A DNA stretch of 64,000 nucleotides from Macrostomum lignano (lineage: Eukaryota), in contig NIVC01001789.1 of NCBI GenBank assembly GCA_002269645.1, forward strand, positions 124,001 to 188,000, read 5' to 3'. Within the stretch, counting starts at the first letter, position 1. Each line of letters begins with the position of its first letter. The notes beneath the pieces are model-generated. The model was not told the origin of the DNA. It worked only from the letters and a program-made list of their open reading frames with translations, and did no database searches. Both the position numbers and the translations under genes were made by a program. This document shows, piece by piece, positions 1 to 52,099 of this stretch.

Positions 1-941
1 GACTTTCTTGGCCCAATTCTGATTGAACCATGCCGGCCAGTTCTTCAGCACGAAGTTCAGGAAGCTGTGTTTCGCTCGGCTCATCATCACCGCATTCGAA
101 ATCAGTGCCGGAAGATTGAACGTGAAGACTGCGTGCTCAGTAGGCTCCTGACTCCACACGGCTGACTCACAGTCGAAGTTCGGAGTCAGCCCCGCTCCCT
201 GAAGCTGCGACTGTCTCAGCAGCGGTGTCGGATCTCGAAGCAGCTCCACATCCGTGTCGACGTACAGACCGCCGACGTGGTGCAGCACGACCAGACGGCC
301 GATGTCCGATCGCTCCAGCCCGTTGACCAGCTTGCGGTAGCTTTGAACAAGGTACGGATAGTGCTTTGAGATGAGCTCGGAGATCTGCTTGTCGTCAAAG
401 TGCATGAAGTGCCAGCGGTCAGTGGGGAATTCGTCAGCATTCGAGCTGTTTCTGTCAGCGCTGCTGCTATCGTTGAGTCTGACATCGAGCAGTCGCCTCC
501 ATGAGCGCACAATGGGAATCAGCTTGGCTGGCACTCGACCGTCTTTGCTGGTCCAGTGCACCAGCGGCGGGATGGAGTCCGGGAAGCGGAAGGGCAGCTC
601 GCCGCACTGCCACTTGTAGCTAAAAATCGACTGCGAAGTCCAGTTTGCGCTGAGCAGGCAGAGCAGCACCGACGCCACCAGGATCAGGAGGAACGATTTC
701 CACTTGTTGGCTGCTGGGATTTTATTTGAAAAAGTTTTGATTCATTTATGAATTACGAAACAGAGCTGTGTATGAGCGTAAAAGATGATGGTCTCTCGGA
801 TTCCAAGTTTTAGGTTTGTTTTTAAGTTCAGTTTTTCTCAACTGCAACTATTGTACGAGCATAAGTGATGTGTTTAAACAAAGGCGGTCACTTACCAGTA
901 CTCAAACAACAGCATGGAAATTGTAACTTTTGGCTTAGCAT
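1..941 (-). CDS. GT32 / DXD-motif glycosyltransferase paralog 1, type II membrane; 3' end runs off the window. Exons complement(896..941, <1..710)
   Basis: Hand translation is open from 710 to base 1: ...IPPLVHWTSKDG...RSDIGRLVVLHHVGGLYVDTDVE...ISNAVMMSRAKHSF. Acceptor cag|CC at 710. Upstream exon MLSQKLQFPCCCLST-G|gtaagt (phase 1) joins in frame to ANKWKSFLLILVASVLLCLLS (TM anchor). Confidence 0.85.
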
Positions 942-1734
942 TCACTTTTGAAAAAAATGATTACGCTATGGTGGTCAATTTCAATCGTCTCGTGTGTGAC
1001 ACATGTAAGTAAAGCAGCCATGGACAGCTAGTGAAAAATTGTCCCTTAAACACTAAAATACTCACAATTCTGGCAGTAGCACGAAAAGCTTCTGTCGGGG
1101 TCAGAAAGAGAGCATGCTACTGCACAGAATGTACTGTCCATTTTTGTGACCTCTGTGCACAACGATGAAGAGAGAAGAGAGTTTGCTTGTTTGCGCGTGT
1201 ATGACTGTGCTCGCCAGTCCAAGGCTTGCTGAAAACTGCGCTTTGTGTGTCAATATGCTCTCTTTCTCCTTGGTATTGTTAGACTCCGAGACTCCTCTCT
1301 ATAGAATGCCAGACAAAGTTGCTGAGTAAGAGTTCCTACCCCGTGAATTACTGAGTTTGTTCGGTACGTGAGGCATGCCCATGAGTTATTATGAATGTAC
1401 ACGTATAAGCGTGAATTCATAACTTGTTACAGCCAGTTGAAAGTATACTTAACAACATGCTAGACCTGCAGTGGGCCTGGGCTAGAGTTGGAAACCTGCG
1501 CCATTGCAATGTAGTGAGCTGAAGTCAGTCAGAGGTTTTCAATATTACCGAGTGTACATTGCATTAAGCTTTCACCCGGATCATTGTTCTAACTGTGCAA
1601 ATTAGGTATAGCCAGAACTATGGGAGGCAGGATTTTCTTCTTGACGATGTCTCCAAACAAAAAAGCAAAGTTCCCAATTCGGGAATTCAGCGCATACTTT
1701 TATTCGATTATCAAATATTCATGATACATTGCGG

Positions 1735-2965
1735 CAGTGTTGGGCAAGTTACTCAAAAAAAGTAACTTACGTTACTGTAACTTAAGTTACCACTTTTTAA
1801 AAAGTAACTTACGTTCGCCTAGTAACTTTGAACAAAAACCCGGTAACTTTTAAGTTACTTCCGTTACTTACTTCCGTTACCTATGTTATTAACAAATTTT
1901 CTGCTTTTTTGACATTGCAAATGTGCTGGAACAGCACAAATGATCGCGAAAGCCAGGAGGAAGAATACAACAACATTAATTTCAGTAACTGTATTAAATT
2001 TTAATCACTTTAGGCCCTTTCCGTAAAAAAAGAGAAGCTGAAGGTCAGAAACGTTAAAGGCAAAACGCAATTTAATTTTTAATAACATTATAAGTTATAA
2101 TACACAAGGACAACTTAACGTAACTTCAGTTGTCCTTGATAATACATCGCTCGTAATAAGTACCTGGCTTTACTCCACTCTACGGTCTGCTTTACTAGTC
2201 TTTTTATTTATTTTCAATTATTATCATTAATATTAAATTATTGTGCAGTGCAGTGCAGTGCCAGTGGACTTTAGTGGTGTAGCCAGGGAGGCCGCCTTAA
2301 CAATCGTTGGGGCGGCAACTTCACCCCACCTGCAAGACACCCCTCCTGGGGGGGTGGGGTTGGGCGTGGCGGGTACCAAAAACCATGAGGCGATTGGGTG
2401 CCTGCGGCGCTTAAATGAGTGCTTGCGGCGCTAAAATGAGTGCCTGCGGCGCTAAAAGTGGCAATGGCATGAGGCATGGCCAGCCAGGCCAACCCGCCCC
2501 CCTCCAATTAAAATTCCTGGCTACGTCGATCACTGAGTGGATTTGTGGAGACTACAGATGAATTTCTTTCTTTGGTTGTTTGTTTCTAAGAACTAAACAA
2601 AATATTTTTATTAACTTAAAAACGAAAAGCAAAAATATTTTACTGAAAATAACAAAGTAAAAACATGTTTCAAGTATTTCTTTATTAATTACAGCGTAAT
2701 ACCGTATGATATTATTCACTTAGTTTTGAATTTAGGAATGAAAAATGCTAAAAATGTGACAACTGGCGTAATAGCTAAGCATATCAGTTTTAAATTTAAA
2801 TATTGCGATTGTTGCAAAGTAACTGTAACGGACTTCCGAAATTTAAGTAACTTACCGTTACCCCGTTACCAAAATAGGAAAGTAACTTGCGTAAGGAACG
2901 CTTTACGAAAAAGTAACTTGCGTTACCATTTACAAGTTACTCGGTAACGGAAGTGCCCAACACTG
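1735..2965. mobile_element. Non-autonomous hAT-type DNA transposon (MITE)
   Basis: 12-bp TIR cagtgttgggca / tgcccaacactg; perfect 8-bp TSD cattgcgg at 1727-1734 and 2966-2973; many subterminal gtaac/gttac repeats; no transposase ORF. Confidence 0.9.
2272..2535. mobile_element. Small GC-rich MITE nested in the hAT element
   Basis: Imperfect TIR gtagccagg / cctggctac; flanks agtggact / agtggatt may be a TSD; contains about 3 copies of the 21-nt gcgctaaaatgagtgcctgcg unit. Confidence 0.5.
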
Positions 2966-3966
2966 CATTGCGGTAGAGAAGCACTCTTAACAGATAATAG
3001 TAAGACAAAACTCAATATTATTTGCGACGCGTTTCGGCTAAAACTAGCCATGTGTTGAAAAAAAGATTTTTCAACACAATAAACGCCACCCATCCTAACA
3101 TTAAATTCACCGTGGAATATGGTGGAAAGAAACTACCGTTTCTTGACATCGAGATCCATCTGAAGGACTGCGCTATTGAGACCGAAGTGTATCGCAAGCC
3201 CACATTCACTAACTTGATGCTTAATTTCCAGGCGTTGTGCCCCAGGGAATGGAAGACGGGAGTCATTCGTTGTCTGCTTCATCGTGCCTATACAGTATGT
3301 TGCTCTTGGTCGTTGCTGCACAACGAGTTTACCAACATTATCAATATTCTCACTGCCAATGGATACCCTATCAACTACATCATGAAGGTTATTGGTAATT
3401 TCTTAGATGAAAAAATTGAAAAAAAGCTTAAACCTAAGCGGCCAGATAGAGAACCAGGAGAACCAATCTTGACTCTTCCTTTTTTGGGCAACTCTTCGAT
3501 TGTGTTTAAGAGGCAAATTCGCAAAACTTGCCAAAAATTCTTTAAGACTAAGATTCATGTAGTGTTCCGTACTCATAAAGTCAGTCAATTTGTTGGGAGT
3601 TTAAAGTCTCGTGTTCCATGTGCTCTCAAGGCAGGTGTCATCTATCGTTTTCGTTGCTCTGTTGACCAGAGCATTACCTACATTGGTAAAACCAAGCGAC
3701 ACCTACTCACGAGAGCCAAGGAACATAGGCAACGAAACTCTCCGATTCATGAACATTTGCTGCAATGCCATGGTTGTTGTGATGAGCCAGACATAACCTC
3801 TCATTTCAAGGTCATAGACAACAGCAAAAATGAGCATAAACTTAACATTCTTGAAGCTCTGCACATTAAGTTACACAAACCCACTCTCAATGTCCAACTA
3901 TCTGGAGGAGGTGCGAGTGAACAGCTGTTGGTGTTCTAAGCTAGAGTACATTTGGGGCGCATACGC

Positions 3967-3971
<5 letters not shown>

Positions 3972-4012
<41 letters not shown>
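3972..4012. repeat. (CT)n microsatellite in the PLE 3' UTR
   Basis: Seen directly. Confidence 0.95.
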
Positions 4013-4015
<3 letters not shown>

Positions 4016-4155
4016 CTCTGTCCTGTCATTCCACAAAAAATATTATGAACATTGCTATACTGTACATTGATCCTTTAGTCCTTTTATATCTTTTCAATAC
4101 CTGATTTTGTCGTCTACACAGTATTTAATAGGTTGAAATAAATTCTGTTCGATAG

Positions 4156-4193
4156 TGCCTGAAGATGGCTAGTTTTAGCCGAAACGCGTCGCA
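4156..4193 (+). ncRNA. Minimal type I hammerhead ribozyme in the PLE 3' repeat
   Basis: tgc-CTGAAGA-t-ggcta(gttt)tagcc-GAAA-cgc-GTC^gca: both catalytic boxes, a 5-bp stem II, a palindromic acgcgt stem III and a 3-bp stem I. Predicted cleavage after 4190. Confidence 0.8.
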
Positions 4194-4215
4194 AATAATA
4201 TTGAGTTTTGTCTTA

Positions 4216-4655
4216 TCATGATACATTATCCATTATCCATTATCTATCCACTATCCATGATCCATCATACATTATCCATTACCCACTATCCATGATCCAT
4301 CATACATTATCCATTATCCATGATCCACGATACATCGTAAATTATCGGCCATTATCCATTAACTACGATCCATCATACATTATCCATTATCCACGAATTC
4401 ATGATCTATGATCCATCATACATTATCCATTATTCATGATCCATCATACATCGTAAATTATCGGCCATTATCCATTTTCCATGATCCATCATTATACACT
4501 ATTCATTATTCATGATCCATCATACATTATCCATGATTCCTTATCTATTATCCATGATCCTTCATACATTATTCATTATCCATTATCCATGATCCATCAT
4601 ACATCGTAAATTATCGGCCATTATCCTTTAACCACGATCCATCATACATTACGAT
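4216..4655. repeat. Degenerate minisatellite (tccatgatccatcatacattatccatta-like) abutting the PLE end
   Basis: Tandem units seen directly. Confidence 0.85.
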
Positions 4656-5303
4656 TTTTACATTAGCTCTAATTATCGAACGCACAAGTCGAGGGTGCAG
4701 ATTTTTATGTTTTATGATACGAGCTTTGTACTTGATTGATTTTAACTAAGTAATTATCTAATAAAAAGAAAAATTGCCCAATTGGCATAAATAAGTGAAT
4801 AAAAATATTTTTCGATGTAATATTCAGCTAGTTCCATTCTGGGAACTGGGAAGTGCATGGGCACCCTGACTAGATTAAAAGATTTTTATCGTTTATAAAG
4901 TTCGATTGCTTATTTTCGAGAGCATCCTCTTGGGCTGTACATGGTAGAACAACTCTGGGGATATGTCGGGCTGGGGACGCAGCCCTACATGTTAACCACA
5001 GATAAATAAAGCAATAGTATTTCAATAACTCGTATTTAGTATAAATCATCCAATCCATTTCCAGTTGCAGACCCGAAAAACTCTTAAAGTATTTACCTCT
5101 AATAAGAGGTTCAAGTTGATGTTTAATTTAAGCTTCAAGTCAATGTGCAAATGTCCATGTCCAACAGCGATAAGTCCGTCTGCTAGCGAACTAAAGCTAC
5201 GAATTGCAGCAGTTACGTTGAATACTCGTGCGTGTCTGAATTGAAAATCAATAACGGAGAAAAACTGCAAATGAATGAGCATATCTCAGATACTGTAGCA
5301 AAT

Positions 5304-7046
<1,743 letters not shown>

Positions 7047-8159
7047 GCACCCGATAGAGCGATCCTTTTCACATGCAATTACTGGCACAAGCTGGTCAAT
7101 ACCAGCTAGAACTGATGAAACTGTGTGCCTCTCTGTACACGTAGCTCTGTGCGCGTCAGCACACGTTTATTTATTCTTACCTGCTCGCGCTTGGACACAG
7201 TACGAGGGTACAAATGCTTTTATTGTTCAATGTCTCAGTACAGTTAGACAACCTATAAGGTCTGAGTCAGCTAGCTGCTGCTACAGGGAGGGACAGTGGC
7301 TGCTGATTGGCTCTTTCTCTCTTTACAAAGTCGTACCCAGAGCTAAGAGTTACATTAACAGTCATACGTTACCTTCTTTAGGCAAAAAGTAGAGTCAAGT
7401 TTAGTTTATAAAAAGGACTGCGACGACAGCTAACTAAATATGCATGATTCCAGCCTGCCTGCAGGGCGTCAGAATCAAGCAAAATCAAGCAAAGCCTGAC
7501 TATTCGAAGTCGTGAGGCATAGCAAGACCAGGGACTTTTAAATCTAGCACCACTAGACTGGAAGCTAGAATAGTTCTTTCGAGTTAGGGCAACTGGGGAT
7601 AGGGGACTGGGGGGAGAGCAGGGAAACAGACAAACGAATGGAAATGTACAGGGCATTAATATGTGCTCGTTGTATGTACAATTTAAGAAATTAGTCACCC
7701 TCCTAACCCCCAGATCCTCCTTGCTTCTCTGCTAAGCACTGACAAGAGTATATGATACATTGCACCCTGCAGGTTGCCCCTTAAATCACAAATCCACACT
7801 GCTATCATTTCCAAGAGCATGCTTCAGTACAAGCTTTAAATGCTGCATGTATGTTCAGCCTACTGCTGATGGTGTCTACTGTCTAATGCTCAACTCGAGC
7901 AACCACGGAATCTCAGTGTGTCAGTCAGTGTGTCGTGTTTGCTGCTACAACTGCCTGGCCGAAGGCCTTTCCGTCACGCATGGAGCCAATGGACTGCCAC
8001 GAAAAGCAAGCATGTTCAGCGACTTACTGACTGGAGGAAAAGCTTTGACCCTCAAGTCCCAGTTAGCTTGTGAATCCATTATCCAGAATCAAGAATTAAA
8101 CTAAAGATTCCTGCAAGGCTGAGTTGTCACCTGAGACCAAGGTCGCCAGTCTGCTGGAT

Positions 8160-8400
8160 GCGGTGTGCAAGACCTCTTGGAGGCAGCAGAAGGGCTGACG
8201 GACAATCGGACTGTGAGCTTTGCCCTGGAGCAGCTGAAGCTCAGCAAGAAGTCATCATGCATCAGGAGGTACTCCAAGGATCTCCTTGTGCTCTCCTACT
8301 TAATCTAATCCATCAGGATACAAGACCGTGCTTGAGCAGGACGTCATCTGCCTCTCATCTGATCGCACGCCGAGGTCCATAACTGCAAGAGTTGGATCTT
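8160..8400 (+). pseudogene. Decayed P-element/THAP9-like transposase fragment
   Basis: Reads FALEQLKLSKKSSCIRRYSKDLLVLSYLI, then across a stop/frameshift NPSGYKTVLEQDVICLSSDRTPR. This resembles the RRYS...AY..L...LP...TL region of P-type transposases; pattern recognition only. Confidence 0.4.
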
Positions 8401-8852
8401 CAAGCGGCGCGGCCTTTACAGCCAAGGCTACCTTGCGCTGCTGAGAGTTTCAAAGCTGTTAACTCTGCTACATCTAGGCAGCTGGAAGTTGAGAATATAT
8501 AAATGCGTCCTGCAGGAATTTCAAACCATATAAAGTGAATTAAGCCTTTCTTACTTCGTTTCTTTTGCCCGTCCAAATGATGATTTTTAACATTGACCAT
8601 CAACATGGTCGAAGTCGTTATGGCTATTATAGACAAATGAATAAATGGAAGACATAGGATTTTTTCCAACTTTGGCCCGGTCTTTCTGATCGACATAACA
8701 AGTATTTCAATTGTAATGGAAGTACGAACGAAGGAAGAAAAAAGGGAAGTTGTTTGTCTTGTTACTATTCTGTTTATGTTTATGACACAGTTTGACTAAT
8801 GTAAGTCAGAAAAGTCATGGCTAAGTAATAACAGTCTTAAGTGTCAGTTACG

Positions 8853-10109
8853 CTAAATTGTACAAGTAAGTATAGGAACTATAGACGAAAATGAGACTGA
8901 CAAAAACATGCGCTCTCTATAGCTTAAGTGCAAAAAGTTATGCAAAGTAAATGTATTGTCGGGAATGCGCTTCGACATAAAGTCGTCTTTAGCCATTCGC
9001 CGACAATATTGCCGTTGTCTCTCATTCAGCCGGCCAGCATCTGAGCAAATTTGCCGCATAATCTTTGGCAGGTAGCCCCAATCGCTGACTGGCTGGAAGG
9101 CCTCCGGTTCAGCCAGCATATTGCCGCACCAGTCGGCAGGTCTGTCGCTCGGCTTCAGCATGGTGTACTCATCGTAGAATGACTGCAGCATCTTTGGCCC
9201 GGTCACTAAAACAGCATCATCGACTGTTCTTTGTGTGATATTGGCCCAATTCTTCTCGAACCAGGACGGCCATTTCATCAGCACGAAGCTCAGGAAGCTG
9301 TGATTCGCTCGGCTCATCATCACCGCATTCGAAATCATTGAATCAATATTGAATATGAATATTGAATGCTCTATTGGCTCCTGACTCCACACTGCTGACT
9401 CACAGTCGAAGTTCGGAGTCAGCCCCGCTCCCTGAAGCTGCGACGGTCTCAGCAGCGGTGTCGGATCTCGAAGCAGCTCCACATCCGTGTCGATGTACAG
9501 ACCGCCGACGTGGTGCAGCACGACCAGACGGCCGATGTCCGATCGCTCCAGCCCGTTGACCAGCTTGCGGTAGCTTTGAACAAGGTACGGATAGTGCTTC
9601 GAGATGAGCTCGGAGATCTGCTTGTCGTCCCAGTGCATGAAGTGCCAGCTCTCTGAGCTGGCCTTGTTGACGTTGTCATTAGTTAATCGTCTCCATGTGC
9701 GCACAATGGGAATTATCTCACTAGGCACTCGGCCGTCTTTGCTGGTCCAGTGCACCAGCGGCGGGATGGAGTCTGGGAACTGGGAGGGCAGCTGGCTGCA
9801 AGGCAGCCCGTCTGGCAAATTTGATTGCGCAGTCTTCTTAGCAGGAATCCGACCGCAGTCTGTTTTGGGTCCGCAAGACTGCTCCAGCTCAATTCTGACC
9901 AGACTGGGAAGCACTTTCAATACCACAACCAGCAGCATTAAAAGCAGCAGACCGCGAATTCGTCCTTAATTTTTTCGCAGATGGGGGGGGCGCAATTCGC
10001 TTTTTAAATCTATTAAAGTACAATAACAGACTGCATGTATACATGTAAAGGCGTAAGTCTGCTGAATGTTGCAACGTGACATTCAAATTTACTCACCGAT
10101 GTCGTCCAT
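8853..10109 (-). CDS. GT32 / DXD-motif glycosyltransferase paralog 3. Exons complement(10097..10109, 8853..9964)
   Basis: ATG GAC GAC ATC G|gtgagt joins acceptor ttaag|GA to give MDDIGRIRGLLLLMLLVVVLKVL (TM); intact DXD motif (YIDTDVE) and stop at 8853. Confidence 0.88.
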
Positions 10110-28900: not shown

Positions 28901-31900
28901 ATCCCCAGAGAGATCCGACAGCCGCCGAGGACCAGTTGATTGACAGTTTAATAGCCAGCCAGCAGGCTCACGCGCGCAGCTACGCGGAGGGCCCCAAAAT
29001 GCCTACGGGTCCCGGTCGCTTGGCTGGCACCAATGCTCGCTATCCGTTTGTATTCGACGAACTTGCTGACGCTCTGCGTCGATCCGCTTATATTGCTGGC
29101 GCTTCCGTGATGCTACCGGCTACGGCTACGCAACGATCGACGCCGAAATTCGACGAAGTGACCCTGCCGCCTAGCTCGGCCAAGCCCACTCACGTTGGCG
29201 CTAATCGGGTGCCGCTAGCCGAACTAGACGAGCTGACCCAGCGAGCCTTTCCCGGCACTAGTCATCTAAACGCTATACAAACTGTAGTATTCGATTCCGC
29301 TTATAAGACTAACGAGAATTTGTTAATCTGCGCCCCAACTGGCGCCGGTAAAACTAACATCGCTATGCTCACTGTTCTGCACGAGATCAAACAAAACATT
29401 GGACCTGGCGGCGTTGTTAAACGAGACGATTTTAAAATTGTCTACGTCTGCCCTATGAAAGCTTTGGCAGCCGAGATGACCGCCAATTTTGGTAAACGTT
29501 TGGCACCGTTGGGCCTCACAGTTCGTGAGTGCACCGGCGATATGCAGCTAACTAAAGCTGAGATTGCTCAAACTCAAATGCTGCTAGTAACGCCAGAGAA
29601 ATGGGATGTGTTGACTAGAAAATCCATTGGCGACGTGGGACTCACTCAATTAGTGAAGCTGCTAATTATTGACGAAGTTCACCTGTTGCACGACGAGCGC
29701 GGCGCTGTGATTGAGTCTATTGTGGCTCGCACGCTTCGTCAGGTGGAATCGTCGCAAAAAATGATTCGAATTGTTGGCTTATCGGCCACTCTGCCTAATT
29801 ATCTGGATGTTGCCCAGTTTCTCAGAGTCAATCCATACAAGGGTTTGTTCTTCTTTGACGCCAGGTTCAGGCCCGTGCCGTTGGGCACCAGCTTTGTTGG
29901 TATTAAAAGTACAAATATTATGCAGCAACAGCAGGACTTTATGGACGTTTGCTTTGATAAGGTGTGTATATCTTTTTGCTCTTGAAAGTGTTTCATTTTG
30001 CAGTTGCTTTAATAGCTTTATAGTTTCCGTTACACTTCTTTAAGATCGCATTACTTGTACTAACCTTAACGTTTGGCCATTAAGGGTAGCTTGGGGTCAC
30101 TCCCATGTATCCCACCTGTGATTAGCTTGGGGTCACTCCTATGTATACCACCTGTGATTAGCTTGGGGTCACTCCTATGCATTCCACCTGTGATTAGCTT
30201 GGGGTCACTCCTATGTATACCACCTGTGATTAGCTTGGGGTCACTCCTATGTATTCCACCTGTGATTAGCTTGGGGTCACTCCTGTATTTCAACTATGAT
30301 TAGCTTTGGATTACTCCCCATGCATCTTACCTGTTAATAGCTTGGAAAAATCCCGAACAGAAGTTTAGCTTGGGATTCCATTATATATGTATATATCTGA
30401 GATCTGCGTATAGTTTGACTGTTTGCAGGTTAAGTAGACCTGACCGCGGTTAGTACGCATTTTCTGCATCTTCTAGTTAAAAACGGTCTACCTTGTAAAT
30501 AACAAACTCACTCAGGTAGTGGAGCAAGTGCGCCAAGGCGAACAAGTGATGGTGTTTGTCCACTCGCGCCCGGAGACTCGCAAGACGGCTATTCGTCTCC
30601 GCGAGATGGCCAGAGAATCTGGTGCTATTAAATACTTTTTACCAGCCGATCCAAACACCTCACACTATGGCCGCGCGCTCAAGGAGGTGGGCCGGTCGCA
30701 TAACCAAGCCTTCAAAGAGCTGTTCGCAGACGGATTCACCATTCATAACGCTGGCATGCTGCGGTCGGATCGCAATCTAGCTGAGAAGTACTTTGCCCAG
30801 GGCATGATTCGATGCTTAGTGTGCACTGCCACCTTAGCCTGGGGCGTCAATCTGCCAGCTCACGCGGTTATTATCAAGGGTACACAAATCTACAACGCTG
30901 AAAAGTCCACTTTTGTCGATCTTGGCATCCTAGATGTGCAGCAGATATTTGGCCGAGCTGGTAGGCCACAGTTTGACAAGGTCGGCTATGGCACTATTAT
31001 TACTACTCACGACAAGCTTAGCCGCTACCTGACACTCATGTGCAGCAGGAATCCTATTGAGAGTAGCTTCATGATTGGCTTAGCCGACAATCTCAACGCT
31101 GAAGTTGCTCTAGGCACCGTGGCTAACACAGAGGAAGCGGTTCGTTGGCTTAGCTACACTTATCTGCACGTTCGGATGAAGCTTAATCCGCTAGTGTACG
31201 GAATTAGTCCCAATCAGTTTGCTACGGATCCTAATTTGGAAAATCACCGACTTGCTTTGATCACGCTGGCTGCTAGAAAGCTGGATAGCGCCAGAATGAT
31301 TCGATTTGATGAACGAACTGGCTATTTGGCTAGCACCGATCTGGGCAGAATTGCCAGCCATTTCTATATTAAATTCAACACTGTCGAAGTTTGGAACGAT
31401 GAATTGTCTGCTCTGTTGCCTAATGAAAAAGTTCTGTCTGTTGTGTCCAAGTCTAAAGAATTTGAGCAGGTCAAAGTGCGCGAGGAAGAACTGCCGGAAT
31501 TGGATCAGGCTGTGCATAATTCTTGCCAGTTTTCCACTGGCGGAGTTGAGAATAGCGAAGGAAAAGTAAGTGAGAGATTGTGTCAGGCTAGGGTAGATTG
31601 TGAGAGGCTAGGGTAGATTGTGTGAGGCTAGGGTAGATTGTGTGAGGCTAGGGTAGATTGTGTGAGGCTAGGGTAGATTGTGTGAGGCTAGGGTAGATTG
31701 TGTGAGGCTAGGGTAGATTGTGTGAGGCTAGGGTAGATTGTGTGAGGCTAGGGTAGATTGTGTGAGGCTAGGGTAGATTGTGTGAGGCTAGGGTAGATTG
31801 TGTGAGGCTAGGGTAGATTGAGTGAGGCTAGGGTAGATTGAGTGAGGCTAGGGTAGATTGAGTGAGGCTAGGGTAGATTGAGTGAGGCTAGGGTAGATTG

Positions 31901-33638
31901 AGTGAGGCTAGGGTAGATTGTGGGGAGCTATGGTAATGAGGAGCAGAGAGGCTAATCATACTGCAAATGACGCTGCCATTATACCAGAAACTGCCAAATC
32001 CCTTCAGGTGAGCGCCCTACTCCAGGTGTACATCGATCGCCAGTCGATAGAAACAGCTTCTCTCGTATCCGACCAAGCCTACGTGGTGCAGAACTGCTCC
32101 CGAGTAGTTCAGGCCCTATTCGAGTACTGCATGCGCAAGGGCTGGCCACAGGCCGCCAGCAGCCTGCTGACCTGGTCCAAGTGCATCAACAGACGCCTGT
32201 GGCCGGATGCTCACCCGTTGAGACAGTTCGACGGCGGCCTGCTCAGGTGGGACATTGTTGACAAACTGGAACGGGCTGGTCCGGCGGCTAACAGTGTGGA
32301 AGCGTTGCGCGAGATGCCGAGGGCCGAGCTAGACGCAATTATTCGATTGAGAGGCTACTCGGAGGATGTGCGCAAGTTGGCTTGGAATTTTCCGCTAGTC
32401 GAATTGGAGGCAGCGTTTCAGCCGATTACTCGAACTATTCTGCGAGTTCGACTGGAGGTGCGGCCTCATTTTCATTGGAACGATCGAATTCACGGAAAGG
32501 TGAGTTTTTGCTTATGTTCAATGACGTCATCGCTGTATCATTGACCAGAGATGTCATAGAATAGAATGTTAATTAGCGGGACATTTCAATGTTCCATTAA
32601 CTATATTATTCATATCATTAACTCACTGGTAGCCTCATAAACTAACTTGTAGCCTCATAAACTAACTAGTAGCCTCATAAACTAACTAGTAGCCTCATAA
32701 AATAACTAGTAACCTCATAAACTAACTAGTAACCTCATAAACTAACTAGTAGCCTTGCTAGTAACCTAAACTAGAAATATCAGTAATTCGCATGCCCGAA
32801 AAAAGCCGGATTACAAAAGTGTATTTTTCAAAAAGAATTCGTACCAAGGAAGATCTGGAAGGAAATATCAATTTCATCAATATCAATATAGTACAGAAAA
32901 ATAAACAATAATGAAAACTTTCGTAGCTTGCCTACTTACACTAGTAGTCTGTTGCAAATGCGTCTATCTCCGATCCGTATATTATATTACTTATTATTTG
33001 AACTTTCCCAGGTTGCCGAATCTTTCTGGGTGTGGGTTGAGGACACCGACAATCAGCACGTGTACCACAGCGACATGGTGCAGCTGTCGCGCAAATCTGT
33101 ACAACGCAACGAGCCGGCTGTTCTAGCTTTCACCATACCGATATTTGAGCCGCTGCCTACTCATTATGTCATTCGATGCGAAAGCGAACGCTGGCTACAC
33201 GCCGGCGACACCTACGTGCTCAGCTTCAAGCACCTGCGCCTGCCGCAGAGCCATCCGCCGCATTCCGAGCTGCTGGACTTGAATCCCCTACCTGTTAGCG
33301 TGCTGAAGGCGCCTCAATTTGAGTCCATCTGCTCCTTTACTCACATGAACCCGGTGCAGACTCAGGTATTTCACGCTGCTTATCACACCGATTGCAACCT
33401 GCTGGTTGGCGCCCCGACTGGCAGCGGCAAAACCTTCATCGCCGAGCTGGCCATCTTCCGGGTGTTCAAAACCAAGCCGGGCCTCAAGTGCGTCTACATT
33501 GCGCCGCTGAAAGCGCTGGTCAGGGAGAGGATCAACGATTGGAAAAAGAAACTGGAGCCTATGAATAAGAAGGTGAGGTGGCGACTGGTAGATTGCTGAA
33601 TAGATAGATAGATGGATAGATGGATAGATGGATAGATG

Positions 33639-33685
<47 letters not shown>

Positions 33686-33714
33686 GGATAGATAGATAGA
33701 TAGATAGATAGATG

Positions 33715-33770
<56 letters not shown>

Positions 33771-33814
33771 TAGATACATAGATAGATACATAGATAGATA
33801 CATAGATAGATAGG

Positions 33815-33847
<33 letters not shown>

Positions 33848-33856
33848 GGATAGATG

Positions 33857-33894
<38 letters not shown>

Positions 33895-33984
33895 CAGATA
33901 GATAGATAGATGGATAGATAGATAGATAGATAGATAGATGGATAGATGGATTAGATAGATAGATAGATAGATAGATGGATAGAT

Positions 33985-34021
<37 letters not shown>

Positions 34022-34091
34022 CAGATAGATAGATAGATAGATGGATAGATAGATAGATAGATAGATGGATAGATGGATAGATGGATAGATG

Positions 34092-34150
<59 letters not shown>

Positions 34151-34179
34151 GAATAGATAGATAGATAGATAGATAGATG

Positions 34180-34231
<52 letters not shown>

Positions 34232-34291
34232 TAGATACATAGATAGATACATAGATAGATAGATACATAGATAGATAGATAGATAGATAGG

Positions 34292-34328
<37 letters not shown>

Positions 34329-34337
34329 GGATAGATG

Positions 34338-34391
<54 letters not shown>

Positions 34392-34481
34392 CAGATAGAT
34401 AGATAGATGGATAGATAGATAGATAGATAGATAGATGGATAGATGGATTAGATAGATAGATAGATAGATAGATGGATAGAT

Positions 34482-34518
<37 letters not shown>

Positions 34519-34660
34519 CAGATAGATAGATAGATAGATGGATAGATGGATTAGATAGATAGATAGATAGATGGATAGATAGATGGATAGATAGATAGAT
34601 AGATAGATGGATAGATAGATAGATGGATAGATGGATAGACAGATAGATAGTAGATAGATG

Positions 34661-34703
<43 letters not shown>

Positions 34704-34736
34704 GGATTAGATAGATAGATAGATAGATGGATAGAT

Positions 34737-34769
<33 letters not shown>

Positions 34770-34812
34770 GATAGATAGGTAGATAGATAGGTAGATAGAT
34801 AGATAGATAGAC

Positions 34813-34858
<46 letters not shown>

Positions 34859-35505
34859 GATAGAAGGGTTGATAGATAGATAGATAGAAGGGTTGATAGA
34901 TAGATAGATAGATAGATAAGACACACACAATTGACTATTCACCTCTCCCTCAAAGCCACCCCGTCCACCGATCCCAGGTTGTAGAGCTCACTGGCGACGT
35001 CGCGCCCGACATGAAAGCCGTGGCCGCAGCCGACCTGATCGTGACCACTCCGGAGAAATGGGACGGCTGCTCCCGCAGCTGGCAGCAGCGCCAGTACGTG
35101 CAACAGGTGGCGCTGCTGGTCATTGACGAGATTCACCTGCTTGGCGAGGACCGCGGCCCTGTGCTAGAAGTTATCGTGTCACGTACCAATTTTATTTGTT
35201 CTCACACGAAGCGCCCAGTTCGAGTTGTCGGTTTGAGCACAGCTCTGGCCAATGCTCAGGATTTGTCCGACTGGCTGGGCATCAGGGAGTCGCTGGGCAT
35301 GTACAACTTCAGGCCCTCTGTGCGCCCGGTTCCGCTGGAGGTGCACATTCAGGGCTACCCGGGGAGGCACTACTGCCCCAGGATGGCGTCTATGAACAAG
35401 CCTGCGTTTCAGGGTGCGCCACTGCTGGGCGGATCTTGCTGTTATAGATAGACAGATAGACAGACAGACAGATAGACAGACAAACAGATAGACAGACAGA
35501 CAGAC

Positions 35506-43240: not shown

Positions 43241-46200
43241 ATCTATCATCTATCTATCTATCTATCTAATCTATCATCTATCTATATCCATCCGAGTCTA
43301 TGCATCACGCTCTCTCTCACTTAGCTCAGCTTTCACGCCACAATTAACACAGCCCACTACTCATAAACCATTTTTTATCATCAGGCTTAGGTCCGCAGCT
43401 AAACCATAAAAAAGGCAAAATCGAAATCTGCTCTGCTCAAATCTGTTCGGTCCACTGCCTCCACCCCCTGATCTGGAATTTTCCTTTTTCAATAAGCCAC
43501 AATTTTTTCCACAAATATATTTCATAAGTCGCGAGGCATGCAGTCAGAAAGAAAACAGAAAAAGCTTTCAAGTTCGACTGTCCATCTTGGCCCCAGCTAT
43601 TCGACAAGATTACGCCATTCGGGCCTGGCCTCGCATCGTTTCAGAGACCCTCCATCACGCGAGGCAAGGGCGGAGAGTGGCAGAGAATCAGTTGAGGCAG
43701 TGGGAAGTCTTTCAATATTTTCATAGCTAATTGGAGCTGGTTGGGGTTCAAAATAAACATTGTGAGAATGCTCAAATCTAACTGTGAGAATCTGTGCTCA
43801 AATCTAACTGTGAGAATCTGTGCTCAAATCTAACTGTGAGAATCTGTGCTCAAATCTATCTATGAGAATCTGTGCTCAAATCTAACTGTGAGAATCTGTG
43901 CTCAAATCTAACTGTGAGAATCTGTGCTCAAATCTAACTGTGAGAATCTGTGCTCAAATCTAACTGTGAGAATCTGTGCTCAAATCTATCTATGAGAATC
44001 TGTGCTCAAATCTAACTGTGAGAATCTGTGCTCAAATCTAACTGTGAGAATCTGTGCTCAAATCTAACTGTGAGAATCTGTGCTCAAATCTATCTATGAG
44101 AATCTGTGCTCAAATCTATCTATGAGAATCTGTGCTCAAATCTAACTGTGAGAATCTGTGCTCAAATCTAACTGTGAGAATCTGTGCTCAAATCTAACTG
44201 TGAGAATCTGTGCTCAAATCTATCTATGAGAATCGGTGCTCAAATCTAACTGTGAGAATCTGTGCTCAAATCTATCTATGAGAATCTGTGCTCAAATCTA
44301 ACTGTGAGAATCTGTGCTCAAATCTATCTATGAGAATCTGTGCTCAAATCTATCTATGAGAATCTGTGCTCAAATCTAACTGTGAGAATCTGTGCTCAAA
44401 TCTAACTGTGAGAATCTGTGCTCAAATCTAACTGTGAGAATCTGTGCTCAAATCTAACTGTGAGAATCTGTGCTCAAATCTATCTATGAGAATCTGTGCT
44501 CAAATCTAACTGTGAGAATCTGTGCTCAAATCTAACTGTGAGAATCTGTGCTCAAATCTAACTGTGAGAATCTGTGCTCAAATCTAACTGTGAGAATCTG
44601 TGCTCAAATCTATCTATGAGAATCTGTGCTCAAATCTAACTGTGAGAATCTGTGCTCAAATCTAACTGTGAGAATCTGTGCTCAAATCTAACTGTGAGAA
44701 TCTGTGCTCAAATCTAACTGTGAGAATCTGTGCTCAAATCTATCTATGAGAATCTGTGCTCAAATCTATCTATGAGAATCTGTGCTCAAATCTATCTATG
44801 AGAATCTGTGCTCAAATCTAACTGTGAGAATCTGTGCTCAAATCTAACTGTGAGAATCTGTGCTCAAATCTAACTGTGAGAATCTGTGCTCAAATCTATC
44901 TATGAGAATCTGTGCTCAAATCTATCTATGAGAATCTGTGCTCAAATCTAACTGTGAGAATCTGTGCTCAAATCTATCTATGAGAATCTGTGCTCAAATC
45001 TAACTGTGAGAATCTGTGCTCAAATCTAACTTTGAGAATCTGTGCTCAAATCTAACTTTGAGAATCTGTGCTCAAATCTAACTGTGAGAATCTGTGCTCA
45101 AATCTAACTGTGAGAATCTGTGCTCAAATCTAACTGTGAGAATCTGTGCTCAAATCTAACTGTGAGAATCGGTGCTCAAATCTAACTGTGAGAATCTGTG
45201 CTCAAATCTAACTATGAGAATCTGTGCTCAAATCTAACTGTGAGAATCTGTGCTCAAATCTATCTATGAGAATCTGTGCTCAAATCTAACTGTGAGAATC
45301 TGTGCTCAAATCTAACTTTGAGAATCTGTGCTCAAATCTAACTTTGAGAATCTGTGCTCAAATCTAACTGTGAGAATCTGTGCTCAAATCTAACTGTGAG
45401 AATCTGTGCTCAAATCTAACTGTGAGAATCTGTGCTCAAATCTAACTGTGAGAATCGGTGCTCAAATCTAACTGTGAGAATCTGTGCTCAAATCTAACTA
45501 TGAGAATCTGTGCTCAAATCTAACTGTGAGAATCTGTGCTCAAATCTAACTGTGAGAATCGGTGCTCAAATCTAACTGTGAGAATCGGTGCTCAAATCTA
45601 ACTGTGAGAATCTGTGGTCAGTACAATATGAGGATTATTTTACATGTTTAAGTATGCTGGCAGAAAGCTTACAGAGAATATTGACTGTCTGTAGAAATCA
45701 ATCGATAGAAAGAAATATGTATATATGGCTATATTCTCCTCATATTGAGCCTGCGCCCCAGTTAAAGCTCGGGATTACAGCACGAACAGATGCCAGTTTA
45801 CTCACAGAATAATCTATTCATTTTTATATATACTTTCCAGAGCGGAGAATTGCTGCAGTTTTGCAATTGCAATTGTTGGCTGCATAATAATGGCCTCACG
45901 TTGGTTGCTCTTCCGGCACAGAAGTTGACTGGCATAAATTATGCTAATTAGTTGGGACACGCGTAGCAACCAAATGCTATCAATAATGCTTGCAGAATTT
46001 TGACTGCTAATATTTTTATGGGCCACTGGACAGTCCATTAATTGGTTTTGTTTCACAAAGTTGCTGTTCAACTTGTTAAAGTTACGTCTAAGACTGTCGT
46101 TGGCGCCATTTTGATGAGTTGTCATTGGCGCCATATTGATGAGTTGTCATTGGCATCATATTGATGAGTTGTCATTGGCACCATATTGATGAGTTGTCAT

Positions 46201-49984: not shown

Positions 49985-51665
49985 TCCACTCTCCCACACT
50001 CTCCCACACACTCCCACACTCTCTCCCACTCTCCACACACTCTCACACACACTCCCACACACTCCCACACTCTCCCACACTCTCCCACACACTCCCACAC
50101 TCTCCCACACTCTCCCACACACTCCCACACACTTCCACACTCTCCCACACACTCCCACACTCTCACACACTCTCCCACACTCTCTCCCACTCTCCACACA
50201 CTCTCCCACACACTCCCACACACTCCCACACTCTCCCACACTCTCCCACACACTCCCACACACTCCCACTCTCTCCCACACACTCCCACACTCTCCCACA
50301 CTCTCTCCCACTCTCCACACACTCTCCCACACTCTCCCACACACTCCCACACTCTCCCACACTCTCCCACACACTCCCACACACTCCCACACTCTCCCAC
50401 ACACTCCCACACTCTCTCACACTCTCCCACACACTCCCACACACTCCCACACTCTCCCACACTCTCTCCCACACTCTCTCACACTCTCCCACACACTCCC
50501 ACACACTCCCACACACTCCCACACTCTCCCACACTCTCTCCCACTCTCCACACACTCTCCCACACACTCCCACACACTCCCACACACTCCCACACTCTCT
50601 CACACTCTCCCACACACTCCCACACTCTCCCACACTCTCCCACACTCTCCCACACTCTCCCACACTCTCCCACACACTCCCACACTCTCTCCCACTCTCC
50701 ACACACTCTCCCACACACTCCCACACACTCTCCCACACACTCCCACACACTCCCACACTCTCCCACACACTCCCACACTCTCCCACTCTCCACACACTCT
50801 CCCACACACTCCCACACACTCCCACACTCTCCCACACACTCCCACACTCTCCCACACTCTCCCACACACTCCCACACACTCCCACACACTCCCACACACT
50901 CCCACACTCTCTCACACTCTCCCACACACTCCCACACACTCCCACACTCTCCACACACTCTCCCACACACTCCCACATACTCCCACACTCTCCCACACTC
51001 TCCCACACTCTCCCACACTCTCCCACACTCTCTCCCACTCTCCACACACTCTCCCACACACTCCCACACTCTCTCCCACTCTCCACACACTCTCCCACAC
51101 TCTCCCACACACTCCCACACTCTCCCACACTCTCCCACACACTCCCACACACTCCCACACTCTCCCACACACTCCCACACTCTCTCACACTCTCCCACAC
51201 ACTCCCACACACTCCCACACTCTCCACACACTCTCCCACACACTCCCACACACTCCCACACTCTCCCACACTCTCCCACACTCTCCCACACTCTCCCACA
51301 CTCTCTCCCACTCTCCACACACTCTCCCACACTCTCCCACACTCTCTCCCACTCTCCCACACTCTCCCACACACTCCCACAGTCTCCCACACTCTCCCAC
51401 ACTCTCTCCCACTCTCCCACACTCTCCCACACACTCCCACAGTCTCCCACACACTCCCACACTCTCCCACACTCTCCCACACTCTCCCACACTCTCCCAC
51501 ACTCTCTCCCACTCTCCCACACTCCCACACACTCTCCCACACTCTCTTCCACTCTCCACACACTCTCCCACACACTCCCACACTCTCCCACACTCGCAAA
51601 CTTTACCAAACTCTCCCACAATCTCTCCCACACTCTCCCACACACTCCCACACTCCCACACTCTC
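49985..51665. repeat. (ctcccacact/cacact)n degenerate 10-mer satellite, almost G-free on the plus strand
   Basis: 1.7 kb seen directly. Confidence 0.97.
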
Positions 51666-52099
51666 CAACACTAACCCACACCAAGAAATCGCTTATCTGT
51701 ATCTCCCCTTATCCCAAAGCCCCGACACGCCAACACGGGCGGTCTCCAAACTGCCCTAATCTCAAAGCAGACACCTGACTAAGGAAGCGAATGTCGAATT
51801 TACAGGAAATTCTGCAAGATAAAGACGTATTTGCTTGGTAATCCTGCTGAGAGCGTCGTGCTCATGCGGAAGAGATTAGCAGATCTCACTTTCTATTTTG
51901 TTAGACTTTAATATCGGCCGTTTAAATGACCAGTTTTTTAATCGGGTTTTGTTAATCCTTTATTACCCGCGGGTCGTGAAATCCCAGCAGGTCATTGAGA
52001 TTAGGAGACAAAAAATACGAGTATTTGTTACTCCAGTGGCTTAAATAAATCTTTTATTTGAGGAATTATGCCTGGGATAGATGAAGGGCGAGTAGCTTT

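What the first reader, a model, noticed from the sequence alone, without database searches (positions are those of the whole stretch)
143..9650. Gene-conversion-like mosaic: near-identical DXD core, divergent flanks
Seen: between paralog 2 (~5830-6103) and paralog 3 (~9378-9648) I count only 3 mismatches over about 270 nt spanning WHFMHWDDKQ to SQEP. The same two genes differ extensively in their N-termini and are only roughly half identical in the C-terminal third. Paralogs 1 and 2 share almost everything from the acceptor to SQEP. All three then diverge abruptly (TEHAVFTFNLPAL / VEHPTFIFNMNKSL / IEHSIFIFNIDSM) and reconverge at ISNAVMMSRA. Inference: recurrent conversion homogenises the nucleotide-sugar-binding core while putative acceptor-specificity loops diversify, a constant-core/variable-loop diversification system.
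Basis: partly seen in the sequence, partly recalled or inferred. Interest (0 to 1): 0.72.

Follow-up and report, generated by a model that had tools for sequence, protein, structure and literature searches.

The report
Gene conversion in flatworm glycosyltransferase array
Three neighbouring glycosyltransferase genes of the flatworm Macrostomum lignano (a fourth lies just outside the window) keep a 273-base catalytic segment almost identical by copying it among themselves, while the rest of each gene is old and very different: a clean but ordinary case of gene conversion between tandem duplicates.

Summary
Paralogs 2 and 3 differ at 3 of 273 nt from WHFMHW to SQEP. Their C-terminal 126 codons are 52% identical in protein and 62% in DNA. 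Synonymous divergence (dS) is 0.03 in the core and about 1.4-1.6 in the C-terminus.

The window is Macrostomum lignano contig NIVC01001789.1. The genes are GT32/Och1-like DXD glycosyltransferases in a four-gene tandem array (p3-p2-p1-p0). The array occurs three times in the assembly, once per subgenome, and all 12 copies show the same mosaic. That argues strongly against an assembly artefact.

An unlinked paralog has a core dS of about 1.1 against the array, and the core evolves at the normal rate between subgenome copies. Nucleotide-level constraint is therefore excluded. The explanation is non-allelic gene conversion.

Conversion is recurrent. p1 and p2 share a longer tract from the exon-2 acceptor to SQEP. 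One subgenome copy of p1 still carries a private linker that the other two have replaced with the p2 linker.

The "diversification system" reading is not supported. The variable loop and C-terminus are ancient, under purifying selection, and nearly unchanged among subgenome copies. The loop is nevertheless a true unconverted island between two converted blocks. Heterology or selection could explain this, and the data cannot decide.

The parts
1..713 (-). Paralog 1 (p1), large second exon, cut by the window start at ...NWAKKV. The full gene gives the 379-aa protein P0002.
   Evidence: The acceptor CAG|CC lies at about 713.
896..941 (-). p1 first exon (MLSQKLQFPCCCLST) with a GTAAGT donor. It is unrelated to the p2 first exon.
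   Evidence: Gene model.
142..414 (-). p1 homogenised core, WHFMHF to SQEP, 273 nt.
   Evidence: It differs from p2 at 8 and from p3 at 7 of 273 nt.
103..141 (-). p1 unconverted loop, TEHAVFTFNLPAL.
5304..6400 (-). Paralog 2 (p2), large second exon including the stop codon (5304-5306).
   Evidence: Pfam PF04488, 42.5 bits.
7025..7046 (-). p2 first exon (MSACLTF-) with a GTAAGC donor. The intron 6401-7024 is mostly (GATA)n.
5829..6101 (-). p2 homogenised core, residues 89-179 of the ORF, containing DXD (D141-T-D143).
5829..6400 (-). The longer p1-p2 conversion tract, from the exon-2 acceptor to SQEP. Its partner in p1 is 142-713.
   Evidence: (runs test p = 1e-4).
5787..5828 (-). p2 unconverted loop, VEHPTFIFNMNKSL. 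It has one extra codon.
5697..5786 (-). p2 ISNAV..NW block, with intermediate (older or rarer) conversion.
   Evidence: Of 18 codons with an invariant amino acid, 5 differ among the paralogs.
6195..6272 (-). p2 FPDSIPPLVHW..PIV block, also partly homogenised with p3 and p0.
5307..5696 (-). p2 C-terminal domain. It is ancient and unconverted, 37-41% nucleotide divergent from the other paralogs.
8853..9965 (-). Paralog 3 (p3) open frame. The ATG ORF is 8853-9938. No gene is called at p3 in any of the three loci.
9375..9647 (-). p3 homogenised core.
   Evidence: It differs from p2 at 3 of 273 nt.
9336..9374 (-). p3 unconverted loop, IEHSIFIFNIDSM.

Best explanation
The window starts inside a tandem, head-to-tail array of four old duplicates (p3, p2, p1 in the window; p0 beyond it). 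They encode type-II membrane glycosyltransferases with a GT-A fold, of the GT32/Och1-like family, in Macrostomum lignano.

Shown:
- The paralogs duplicated long ago. The C-terminal halves are saturated at synonymous sites.
- A 273-nt segment encoding the DXD half of the fold is kept 97-100% identical by recurrent non-allelic gene conversion between the neighbouring genes.
- p1 and p2 also share a younger, longer tract that runs from the first base of exon 2 to the same 3' end.
- Two conserved blocks beside the core (FPDS..PIV and ISNAV..NW) are converted less often.

Inferred:
- Tracts stop at fixed 'walls'. One is a linker of variable length on the 5' side. The other is a 39-42-nt loop, about 40% divergent and carrying an indel, on the 3' side.
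- Strong heterology there aborts heteroduplex formation, or converted variants there are removed by selection, or both.
- The outcome is a shared catalytic core with stable, paralog-specific N-terminal stems, a post-SQEP loop and C-terminal domains.
For: 1. dS is 0.03-0.05 in the core and 1.4 to saturated in the C-terminus for all six pairs of paralogs. The synonymous-codon test gives p = 1e-9 to 1e-16.
2. Control for constraint: the unlinked single-copy paralog P0004 has a core dS of about 1.1 against every array member. At codons with identical amino acids, it differs in 44-46% in the core and 46-54% elsewhere (p = 0.3-1).
3. Between subgenome orthologues the core changes as fast as the rest of the gene, 0-1.5% against 0.7-1.6%. 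The core is therefore not a slow-evolving sequence.
4. The tract includes a surface insertion that varies across the family (residues 151-170; occupancy 0.15-0.5 in 71 distant homologues; lower pLDDT). It is nonetheless identical among array members.
5. The same mosaic appears on three separate contigs (NIVC01001789, NIVC01001938, NIVC01000051). Paralog-diagnostic core SNPs are shared across the contigs, for example sites 48 and 291.
6. Recurrence: p1C and p2C differ at 1 of about 572 nt, less than the divergence between subgenomes. p1B keeps a private 42-nt linker with no donor anywhere, flanked by sequence identical to p2. p1A and p1C carry the p2 linker, with 0 of 93 differences.
7. A Sawyer-type runs test detects the p1-p2 tract (p = 1e-4).
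8. Three tiers of synonymous variability among codons with an invariant amino acid: core 5/84, flanking blocks 5/20 and 5/18, C-terminus 35/44.
9. Family identity: Pfam PF04488 above threshold; profile hit to yeast Och1, PDB 9n3s, E = 1.6e-20; AlphaFold model with pLDDT 88.7 whose best Foldseek hit is Och1, E = 1.7e-8.
Against: - No raw reads were examined. Short-read polishing could have erased or created a few of the core SNPs.
- The GENECONV-style test is blind to the core, because all four genes are homogenised and few polymorphic sites remain there.
- The signature of GC-biased conversion is ambiguous. Core GC3 is 0.77 against 0.55 in the C-terminus, but the unlinked paralogs also have core GC3 of 0.76-0.85.
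- Two of the three core SNPs that look like exchange after the subgenome split are CpG transitions and could be parallel mutations.
- The phasing of the three loci is uncertain. Relationships switch along the array, and the published analysis reports many chimeric scaffolds (PMC10733133).
- The cause of the sharp tract ends is inferred, not tested.
Confidence: 0.88

Rival explanations
1. Selection-maintained divergence. Conversion would homogenise more of the gene, but variants in which the post-SQEP loop or the C-terminus has been overwritten are removed, because these parts give each paralog a distinct acceptor specificity. This is the defensible core of the first reader's idea. It refines the best explanation rather than replacing it.
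For: - The loop is an unconverted island (22 of 39 nt variable) between the core (10 of 273) and the ISNAV block (17 of 90). Fisher p = 6e-16 and 5e-5.
- All tracts end within a few bases of the same point in all four paralogs and all three loci.
- Each paralog's loop is held constant among subgenome copies.
- In yeast Och1, modelled acceptor-contacting residues lie after the DXD motif and in the C-terminal part (PMC12312940).
Against: - dN/dS is below 1 in both the loop and the C-terminus, so positive selection is not detectable.
- The same wall is expected from heterology alone: about 40% mismatch plus an indel.
- The correspondence between the loop and the Och1 acceptor residues could not be aligned. 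The profile alignment stops just after the DXD motif.
- No biochemical data exist.
Confidence: 0.35
2. Constraint at the nucleotide level. The core is identical because an embedded RNA or DNA element, or extreme codon selection, prevents synonymous change, and no DNA is exchanged.
For: The core is the most conserved protein segment of the family and has high GC3.
Against: - The unlinked paralogs P0004 and P0005 have core dS of 1.1-1.3 against the array and against each other.
- Subgenome orthologues differ in the core at the same rate as elsewhere.
- The tract includes an insertion loop that varies across the family.
Confidence: 0.02
3. Assembly or polishing artefact. The identical core results from a collapsed consensus or from reads mapped to more than one place.
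For: The genome is neopolyploid with three subgenomes, and 36% of assembly length lies in chimeric scaffolds (PMC10733133). Relationships among the loci switch along the array.
Against: - A 273-nt patch inside genes that otherwise differ by about 40% lies far inside single long reads and cannot be produced by collapse.
- The pattern is reproduced on three contigs with consistent paralog-specific SNPs inside the core.
- All reading frames are intact.
Confidence: 0.03
4. A programmed diversification system, comparable to the cassette-based conversion used for antigenic or receptor variation. In this view a constant scaffold is combined with actively varied loops.
For: Only the superficial constant/variable layout.
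Against: - The variable parts differ by 0-1 nt (loop) and about 1% (C-terminus) among subgenome copies, so there is no hypervariation.
- All 12 copies are intact genes, with no silent cassettes.
- The only reverse-transcriptase-related sequence nearby is a Penelope-like GIY-YIG fragment, present in locus A only.
- Conversion acts on the constant part, not the variable part.
Confidence: 0.01

Closest known systems
Concerted evolution by non-allelic gene conversion in tandem arrays, for example the variable exons of clustered protocadherins (Noonan et al. 2004, as summarised in PMC1885805) and the tandem arrays of Trypanosoma brucei (PMC1855330)
   Same: Physically close paralogs in the same orientation. 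Conversion is confined to part of the coding sequence. The other parts stay paralog-specific. The pattern shows up as a local collapse of synonymous divergence.
   Different: This case is a four-gene glycosyltransferase array in a flatworm, replicated in three subgenomes. The tract ends are unusually sharp and are shared by all members. A 39-42-nt unconverted island sits between two converted blocks.
Red/green opsin and similar cases in which selected differences persist inside converted paralogs. The relevant theory is Walsh 1987 and Teshima & Innan 2004/2008. This comparison rests on my own knowledge and was not checked here.
   Same: Islands of divergence persist next to homogenised sequence. 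Heterology and selection both limit the tracts.
   Different: No functional difference between the paralogs is known here, and positive selection was not detectable.
Yeast Och1, the initiation-specific alpha-1,6-mannosyltransferase (CAZy GT32; PDB 9n3s; PMC12312940)
   Same: GT-A fold, DXD motif, type-II membrane topology. Profile match E = 1.6e-20 over the donor-binding half. Best structural match.
   Different: Only 14-16% identity. The sugar donor and the acceptor are unknown. The flatworm clade is separated by a large gap from all other relatives (E below 1e-140 within M. lignano, 1e-32 for the next hit).
Animal A4GALT / A4GNT, the names that UniRef gives some of these proteins
   Same: They share the Pfam PF04488 DXD region.
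   Different: The C-terminal Gb3_synth domain (PF04572) was not detected at E <= 0.01. One subgenome copy is instead named alpha-1,6-mannosyltransferase, so the automatic names conflict.

Membership tests
Non-allelic (ectopic) gene conversion between paralogs | A segment with much lower divergence than the flanking parts of the same paralogs | tested here: met
   Core 1-9 of 273 nt differ, against 144-171 of 390 in the C-terminus, over 8-12 copies.
Non-allelic (ectopic) gene conversion between paralogs | The deficit holds at synonymous sites and is not explained by constraint (outgroup or rate control) | tested here: met
   dS is 0.03-0.05 within the array and about 1.1 against unlinked P0004. 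The orthologue rate in the core equals the rate elsewhere.
Non-allelic (ectopic) gene conversion between paralogs | Different segments give incongruent relationships | tested here: met
   In the C-terminus and the loop, copies group by paralog, with p3 nearest p2 and p1 nearest p0. In the N-terminus p1 equals p2. In the core all copies are about equal.
Non-allelic (ectopic) gene conversion between paralogs | An identifiable donor-to-recipient event | tested here: met
   p1A and p1C carry the p2 linker (0 of 93 differences). p1B keeps a private linker for which no donor was found. The polarity is inferred by parsimony.
Non-allelic (ectopic) gene conversion between paralogs | GC-biased signature in converted tracts | tested here: inconclusive
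   GC3 is 0.77 in the core and 0.55 in the C-terminus within the array, but the unlinked paralogs also have 0.76-0.85 in the core.
Non-allelic (ectopic) gene conversion between paralogs | Not an assembly artefact (support from single molecules) | not testable with these tools
   No reads were available. Indirect support comes from three independent contigs.
GT32 / Och1-like DXD glycosyltransferases (Pfam Gly_transf_sug) | PF04488 match above the gathering score | tested here: met
   42.5 and 44.2 bits against a cut-off of 23.
GT32 / Och1-like DXD glycosyltransferases (Pfam Gly_transf_sug) | DXD motif and GT-A fold | tested here: met
   D141-T-D143 are invariant in 78 sequences. The AlphaFold model has pLDDT 88.7. 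The best Foldseek hit is Och1, 9n3s. Profile E = 1.6e-20.
GT32 / Och1-like DXD glycosyltransferases (Pfam Gly_transf_sug) | Type-II membrane topology | tested here: inconclusive
   An N-terminal hydrophobic stretch, FLLILVASVLLCLL, is read directly from the sequence. No topology predictor was run.
GT32 / Och1-like DXD glycosyltransferases (Pfam Gly_transf_sug) | Retaining transfer from a nucleotide sugar to a defined acceptor | not testable with these tools
   This requires an enzyme assay.
A4GALT / A4GNT subfamily | C-terminal Gb3_synth domain (PF04572) | tested here: not met
   Only PF04488 was reported at E <= 0.01.
Programmed diversification by cassette conversion | Hypervariation of the variable part between close lineages or copies | tested here: not met
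   The loop differs by 0-1 nt and the C-terminus by about 1% among the three subgenome orthologues.
Programmed diversification by cassette conversion | Silent donor cassettes or dedicated machinery at the locus | tested here: not met
   All copies are intact full-length genes. The only mobile-element ORF is a Penelope-like fragment found in locus A alone.

The most novel reading that the evidence does not exclude
The post-SQEP loop, and perhaps the C-terminal domain, is kept different by selection while conversion runs on both sides of it. In that case the array is a natural modular design: one shared donor-binding core with paralog-specific acceptor modules. The wall positions would then mark the specificity determinants of an uncharacterised GT32 clade restricted to this lineage.
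Probability: 0.3. Interest if true: 0.5.

Novelty: new member of a known kind. Interest (0 to 1): 0.33.

Why it matters
- It is a clean, internally controlled example of segment-limited concerted evolution: four paralogs, three subgenome copies each, and unlinked outgroup paralogs. It could be used to measure conversion rates, tract lengths and the effect of heterology in a neopolyploid flatworm.
- It carries a warning for annotation and phylogeny. Trees built from the DXD region of these genes will be wrong, and short-read mapping and polishing in the core will be ambiguous.
- The sharp walls suggest which parts of an uncharacterised GT32 enzyme are free to differ, or required to differ, between paralogs. 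That gives a cheap hypothesis for acceptor-specificity determinants.
- It does not reveal a new mechanism.

Tried and rejected
- **Sawyer/GENECONV-type runs test** on polymorphic sites of the four locus-A paralogs. It detects only the p1-p2 tract. It cannot see the core, because all four genes are homogenised there. I replaced it with Fisher tests on synonymous codons and an unlinked outgroup.
- **AlphaFold with the seven M. lignano sequences only.** The model was unusable, pLDDT 37.6. I repeated it with 78 sequences.
- **Aligning the loop to the Och1 acceptor residues by profile.** The alignment ends just after the DXD motif, so no residue correspondence was obtained.
- **GC3 as a signature of biased conversion.** Ambiguous.
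- **Core SNPs shared across paralogs as proof of exchange after the subgenome split.** Two of the three are CpG transitions, so this evidence is weak.
- **Donor search for the private p1B linker** in all fetched loci and in the window. None found.
- **Repeats or palindromes at the tract ends** as a possible hotspot. Nothing notable.
- **Literature.** No paper links M. lignano with gene conversion in this family, and the four gene identifiers I searched return no papers.
- **A start codon supplied by a spliced leader for p1 and p2.** I rejected this by reasoning only: an ATG fused at the acceptor would be out of frame. Canonical short first exons with GTAAG donors exist.
- **Site-model dN/dS on the loop.** Not attempted. 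There are 13 codons and 4-6 sequences, and dS is saturated.


Full report
**What is at the coordinates**

The first 10 kb of the window carries three homologous open reading frames on the minus strand.
- p3 is at 8853-9965.
- p2 is at 5304-6400.
- p1 is at 1-713 and is cut by the window start.

Each ORF matches Pfam PF04488, the glycosyltransferase sugar-binding region with the DXD motif, above the gathering score. tblastn finds no further copy in the other 54 kb.

p1 and p2 have no in-frame ATG in the large exon. Short first exons with GTAAG donors lie at 941-896 for p1 and 7046-7025 for p2. The p2 intron is mostly a (GATA)n array at 6434-6910.

**Check of the observation**

- p2 and p3 differ at 3 of 273 nt from WHFMHW to SQEP (6101-5829 against 9647-9375).
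- p1 differs from each of them at 7-8 of 273.
- p1 and p2 differ at 13 of 573 nt from the acceptor to SQEP.
- The p2 and p3 N-termini are 30% identical in protein. Their last 126 codons are 52% identical in protein and 62% in DNA.
- After SQEP, 13-14 codons diverge (10-17 of 39 nt). Similarity returns at ISNAVMMSRA.

Nei-Gojobori dS is 0.03-0.05 in the core. In the C-terminus it is about 1.4-1.6 for p2-p3 (depending on the alignment used) and higher, up to saturation, for the other pairs.

**Origin and wider context**

[quoted passage not shown] The window is contig NIVC01001789.1 of assembly GCA_002269645.1.

Just beyond the window start lies a fourth paralog, p0. The array order in the direction of transcription is p3-p2-p1-p0, with 2-7 kb between genes.

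The whole four-gene array occurs twice more in the assembly, on contigs NIVC01001938.1 and NIVC01000051.1. This fits the published finding that the assembly holds three subgenomes, S, L1 and L2, that differ by 1.4-2.4% in SNPs (PMC10733133). I call the three loci A (the window), B and C. All 12 copies have intact reading frames.

**The same mosaic in all 12 copies**

- Over the 273-nt core only 13 sites vary among the 12 sequences, and no pair differs at more than 9 sites.
- In the C-terminal 390 nt, paralogs differ at 144-171 sites, whereas orthologues in the three loci differ by about 1% over the non-core parts of the genes.
- Some core variants are diagnostic for one paralog in all three loci: site 48 for p0 and site 291 for p1. 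The main homogenisation therefore slightly predates the subgenome split, and the three contigs are independent witnesses.

This makes assembly collapse very unlikely, although no reads were examined.

**Excluding constraint**

Three controls show that the core is not simply slow-evolving DNA.

1. P0004 is an unlinked single-copy paralog on another contig. Its core dS is about 1.1 against every array member, similar to its other segments. At codons that encode the same amino acid, P0004 differs from array members in 44-46% of core codons and 46-54% of other codons (p = 0.3-1). Within the array the figures are 2-3 of 85 in the core against 46-65% in the C-terminus (p = 1e-9 to 1e-16).
2. Between orthologues in loci A, B and C the core changes about as fast as the rest of the gene.
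3. The tract includes residues 151-170. In 71 distant homologues this stretch is a poorly populated, variable insertion (occupancy 0.15-0.5). It also has lower model confidence. Yet it is identical in DNA among array members.

The only remaining explanation is transfer of sequence between the paralogs, that is, non-allelic gene conversion.

**Recurrence and polarity**

Conversion has happened more than once.
- The p1-p2 tract is longer than the core tract shared by all four genes. It begins within a few bases of the exon-2 acceptor, while the introns and first exons are unrelated or at most weakly similar (a stretch just upstream of the acceptor aligns).
- The tract is very young in locus C. 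p1C and p2C differ at 1 of about 572 nt, less than the divergence between subgenomes.
- p1B keeps a private 42-nt linker between sequences identical to p2. No donor for it exists in any fetched locus. p1A and p1C have the p2 linker with 0 of 93 differences.
- The simplest reading is a p2-to-p1 conversion that erased the p1 linker in the lineage of A and C. In this part of the array B is the most divergent haplotype, which fits.
- Two conserved blocks beside the core have intermediate synonymous variability. Among codons whose amino acid is invariant in the four paralogs, the codon differs in 5 of 20 for FPDS..PIV and 5 of 18 for ISNAV..NW. The figures are 5 of 84 for the core and 35 of 44 for the C-terminus. 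These blocks have been converted, but less recently or less often.

Three core SNPs are shared across paralogs yet differ among loci, which would suggest exchange after the subgenome split. Two of them are CpG transitions, so this point is weak.

**The walls**

Both ends of the core tract are sharp to within a few nucleotides, and they fall at the same place in all paralogs and loci.
- The 5' wall is the linker. Its length is 14 to about 100 codons depending on the paralog.
- The 3' wall is the post-SQEP loop. It is 20-46% divergent, and p2 has an extra codon there.

The loop is a true island. Of its 39 nt, 22 vary among the four paralogs, against 10 of 273 in the core and 17 of 90 in the ISNAV block on its other side (p = 6e-16 and 5e-5).

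Two explanations fit, and I could not separate them. Dense mismatches and indels may abort heteroduplex formation, which would make the barrier self-reinforcing. Or variants with an overwritten loop may be removed by selection. dN/dS is below 1 in both the loop and the C-terminus. The loop is too short, and dS too saturated, for a site test.

**What the proteins are**

A profile of the family finds thousands of distant relatives. There is a large gap between the M. lignano clade (E below 1e-140) and everything else (best E = 1e-32).
- With 78 sequences, AlphaFold gives a confident GT-A model: pLDDT 88.7 and pTM 0.88.
- Its best structural match in the PDB is yeast Och1 of family GT32 (9n3s, E = 1.7e-8).
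- The profile matches the Och1 sequence at E = 1.6e-20, from the first beta strand through the DXD motif.
- Glycosyltransferase domains of several bacterial effectors and toxins appear only as more distant GT-A relatives. I did not pursue them.

In the model:
- The core tract covers beta-2, three helices, the DXD strand pair (D141-T-D143), the variable insertion and the strand ending in WSQEP.
- The loop is a short helix plus coil (residues 180-193).
- ISNAV is the next strand.

E178 (in SQEP) and N196 (in ISNA) are nearly invariant across the family. The Och1 paper places donor-binding residues in the N-terminal half. Its modelled acceptor contacts are at E243, Q260 and the C-terminal part (PMC12312940). 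Calling the core 'donor-binding' is therefore reasonable. Calling the loop an 'acceptor-specificity loop' is only a hypothesis.

The UniRef names for these proteins conflict: alpha-1,4-N-acetylglucosaminyltransferase for some, alpha-1,6-mannosyltransferase for another. The Gb3_synth domain of A4GALT/A4GNT was not detected.

**Verdict on the interpretation**

Gene conversion that homogenises the DXD core is supported. A 'diversification system' is not.
- The variable parts are old and are conserved within each paralog.
- They are essentially identical among subgenome copies.
- Conversion acts on the constant part.
- There are no silent cassettes and no dedicated machinery.

The phenomenon belongs to a well-known class: segment-limited concerted evolution in tandem arrays. 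Protocadherin variable exons are an example (summarised in PMC1885805). Divergent islands maintained by heterology or selection are also known, with opsins and the Walsh and Teshima-Innan theory as examples from my own knowledge.

What is pleasing here is the natural replication, four paralogs in three subgenomes plus unlinked controls, and the sharpness of the walls.

**Scores**

This is a new member of a known kind. Interest is about 0.33. Confidence that conversion is the cause is about 0.88. The most novel reading still open is that selection keeps acceptor modules distinct around a shared core. I give that a probability of about 0.3.

Noticed in passing
L001 17498-18832 (beyond the window start); L002 21979-23313; L006 16668-18002: A fourth array member, p0 (416-418 aa), has the same homogenised core. 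Its linker is much longer and contains a 39-codon in-frame stretch that the deposited gene model removes as an intron.
   Followed up: partly
window 8853-9965 (p3); L002 4689-5801; L006 502-1614: p3 is an intact 361-370-codon frame in all three loci. Between loci A and B its pN/pS is about 0.2. No gene is called at that position in any of the three loci.
   Followed up: partly
window 397-399 and about 211 (p1 core): The window's copy of p1 has private non-synonymous changes in the core. One is a tandem GG>TT change that turns W94 into F (WHFMHF); W94 is nearly invariant across the family. Another is P>Q in LLRQSQ. For p1 (A against C) and p0 the ratio pN/pS is about 1.0-1.3, based on very few changes. 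This may reflect relaxed constraint on some homeologous copies.
   Followed up: partly
L001, L002/L003 and L006 over the whole array: The relationships among the three subgenome loci switch along the array. C is 99.3-99.8% identical to B across p3 and the p2 intron. Across p1 and the p1-p0 spacer, C is 97.5-98% identical to A, and B is only 91-94% identical there. This could be homeologous exchange, or haplotype switching in the assembly.
   Followed up: partly
window 3001-4215: An ORF with a GIY-YIG domain at 3022-3939 (+ strand; Pfam PF01541, E = 2e-5) is typical of a Penelope-like retroelement fragment. It is bracketed by a perfect 51-nt inverted repeat (3001-3051 and 4165-4215) and followed by a TTATCCA-type tandem array at 4213-4651. 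The p2-p1 spacer is 4.6 kb here and about 1.9-2.0 kb in loci B and C, so the insertion appears specific to locus A.
   Followed up: partly
window 6434-6910: A (GATA)n microsatellite of about 119 units fills most of the p2 intron, about 45 nt upstream of the acceptor. It is present in all three loci.
   Followed up: partly
window 28936-33599 (+): These are exons of a Brr2/SNRNP200-like Ski2-type helicase, with DEAD, Helicase_C, winged-helix and Sec63 domains. The gene is broken up by introns that contain minisatellite arrays.
   Followed up: partly
window 20488-63995: The density of minisatellite and microsatellite arrays is extraordinary. There are dozens of arrays with periods of 4-35 nt and lengths of 0.2-3.5 kb. 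Examples are (ATAG)n at 33600-34918, a 26-mer repeated 71 times at 43769-45620, a 10-mer repeated 168 times at 49987-51681, and (TCTCC)n from 60460 to the window end. They cause strong GC and AT skews.
   Followed up: no
window 1-714 and 5697-6400 against the unconverted parts: Within the array, converted blocks have GC3 of 0.65-0.80. The unconverted C-terminus has 0.52-0.58, and the p3 and p2 loops 0.31-0.50. The unlinked paralogs have GC3 of 0.74-0.85 in both the core and the C-terminus. This is compatible with GC-biased conversion offsetting AT-biased decay, but it is not conclusive.
   Followed up: partly
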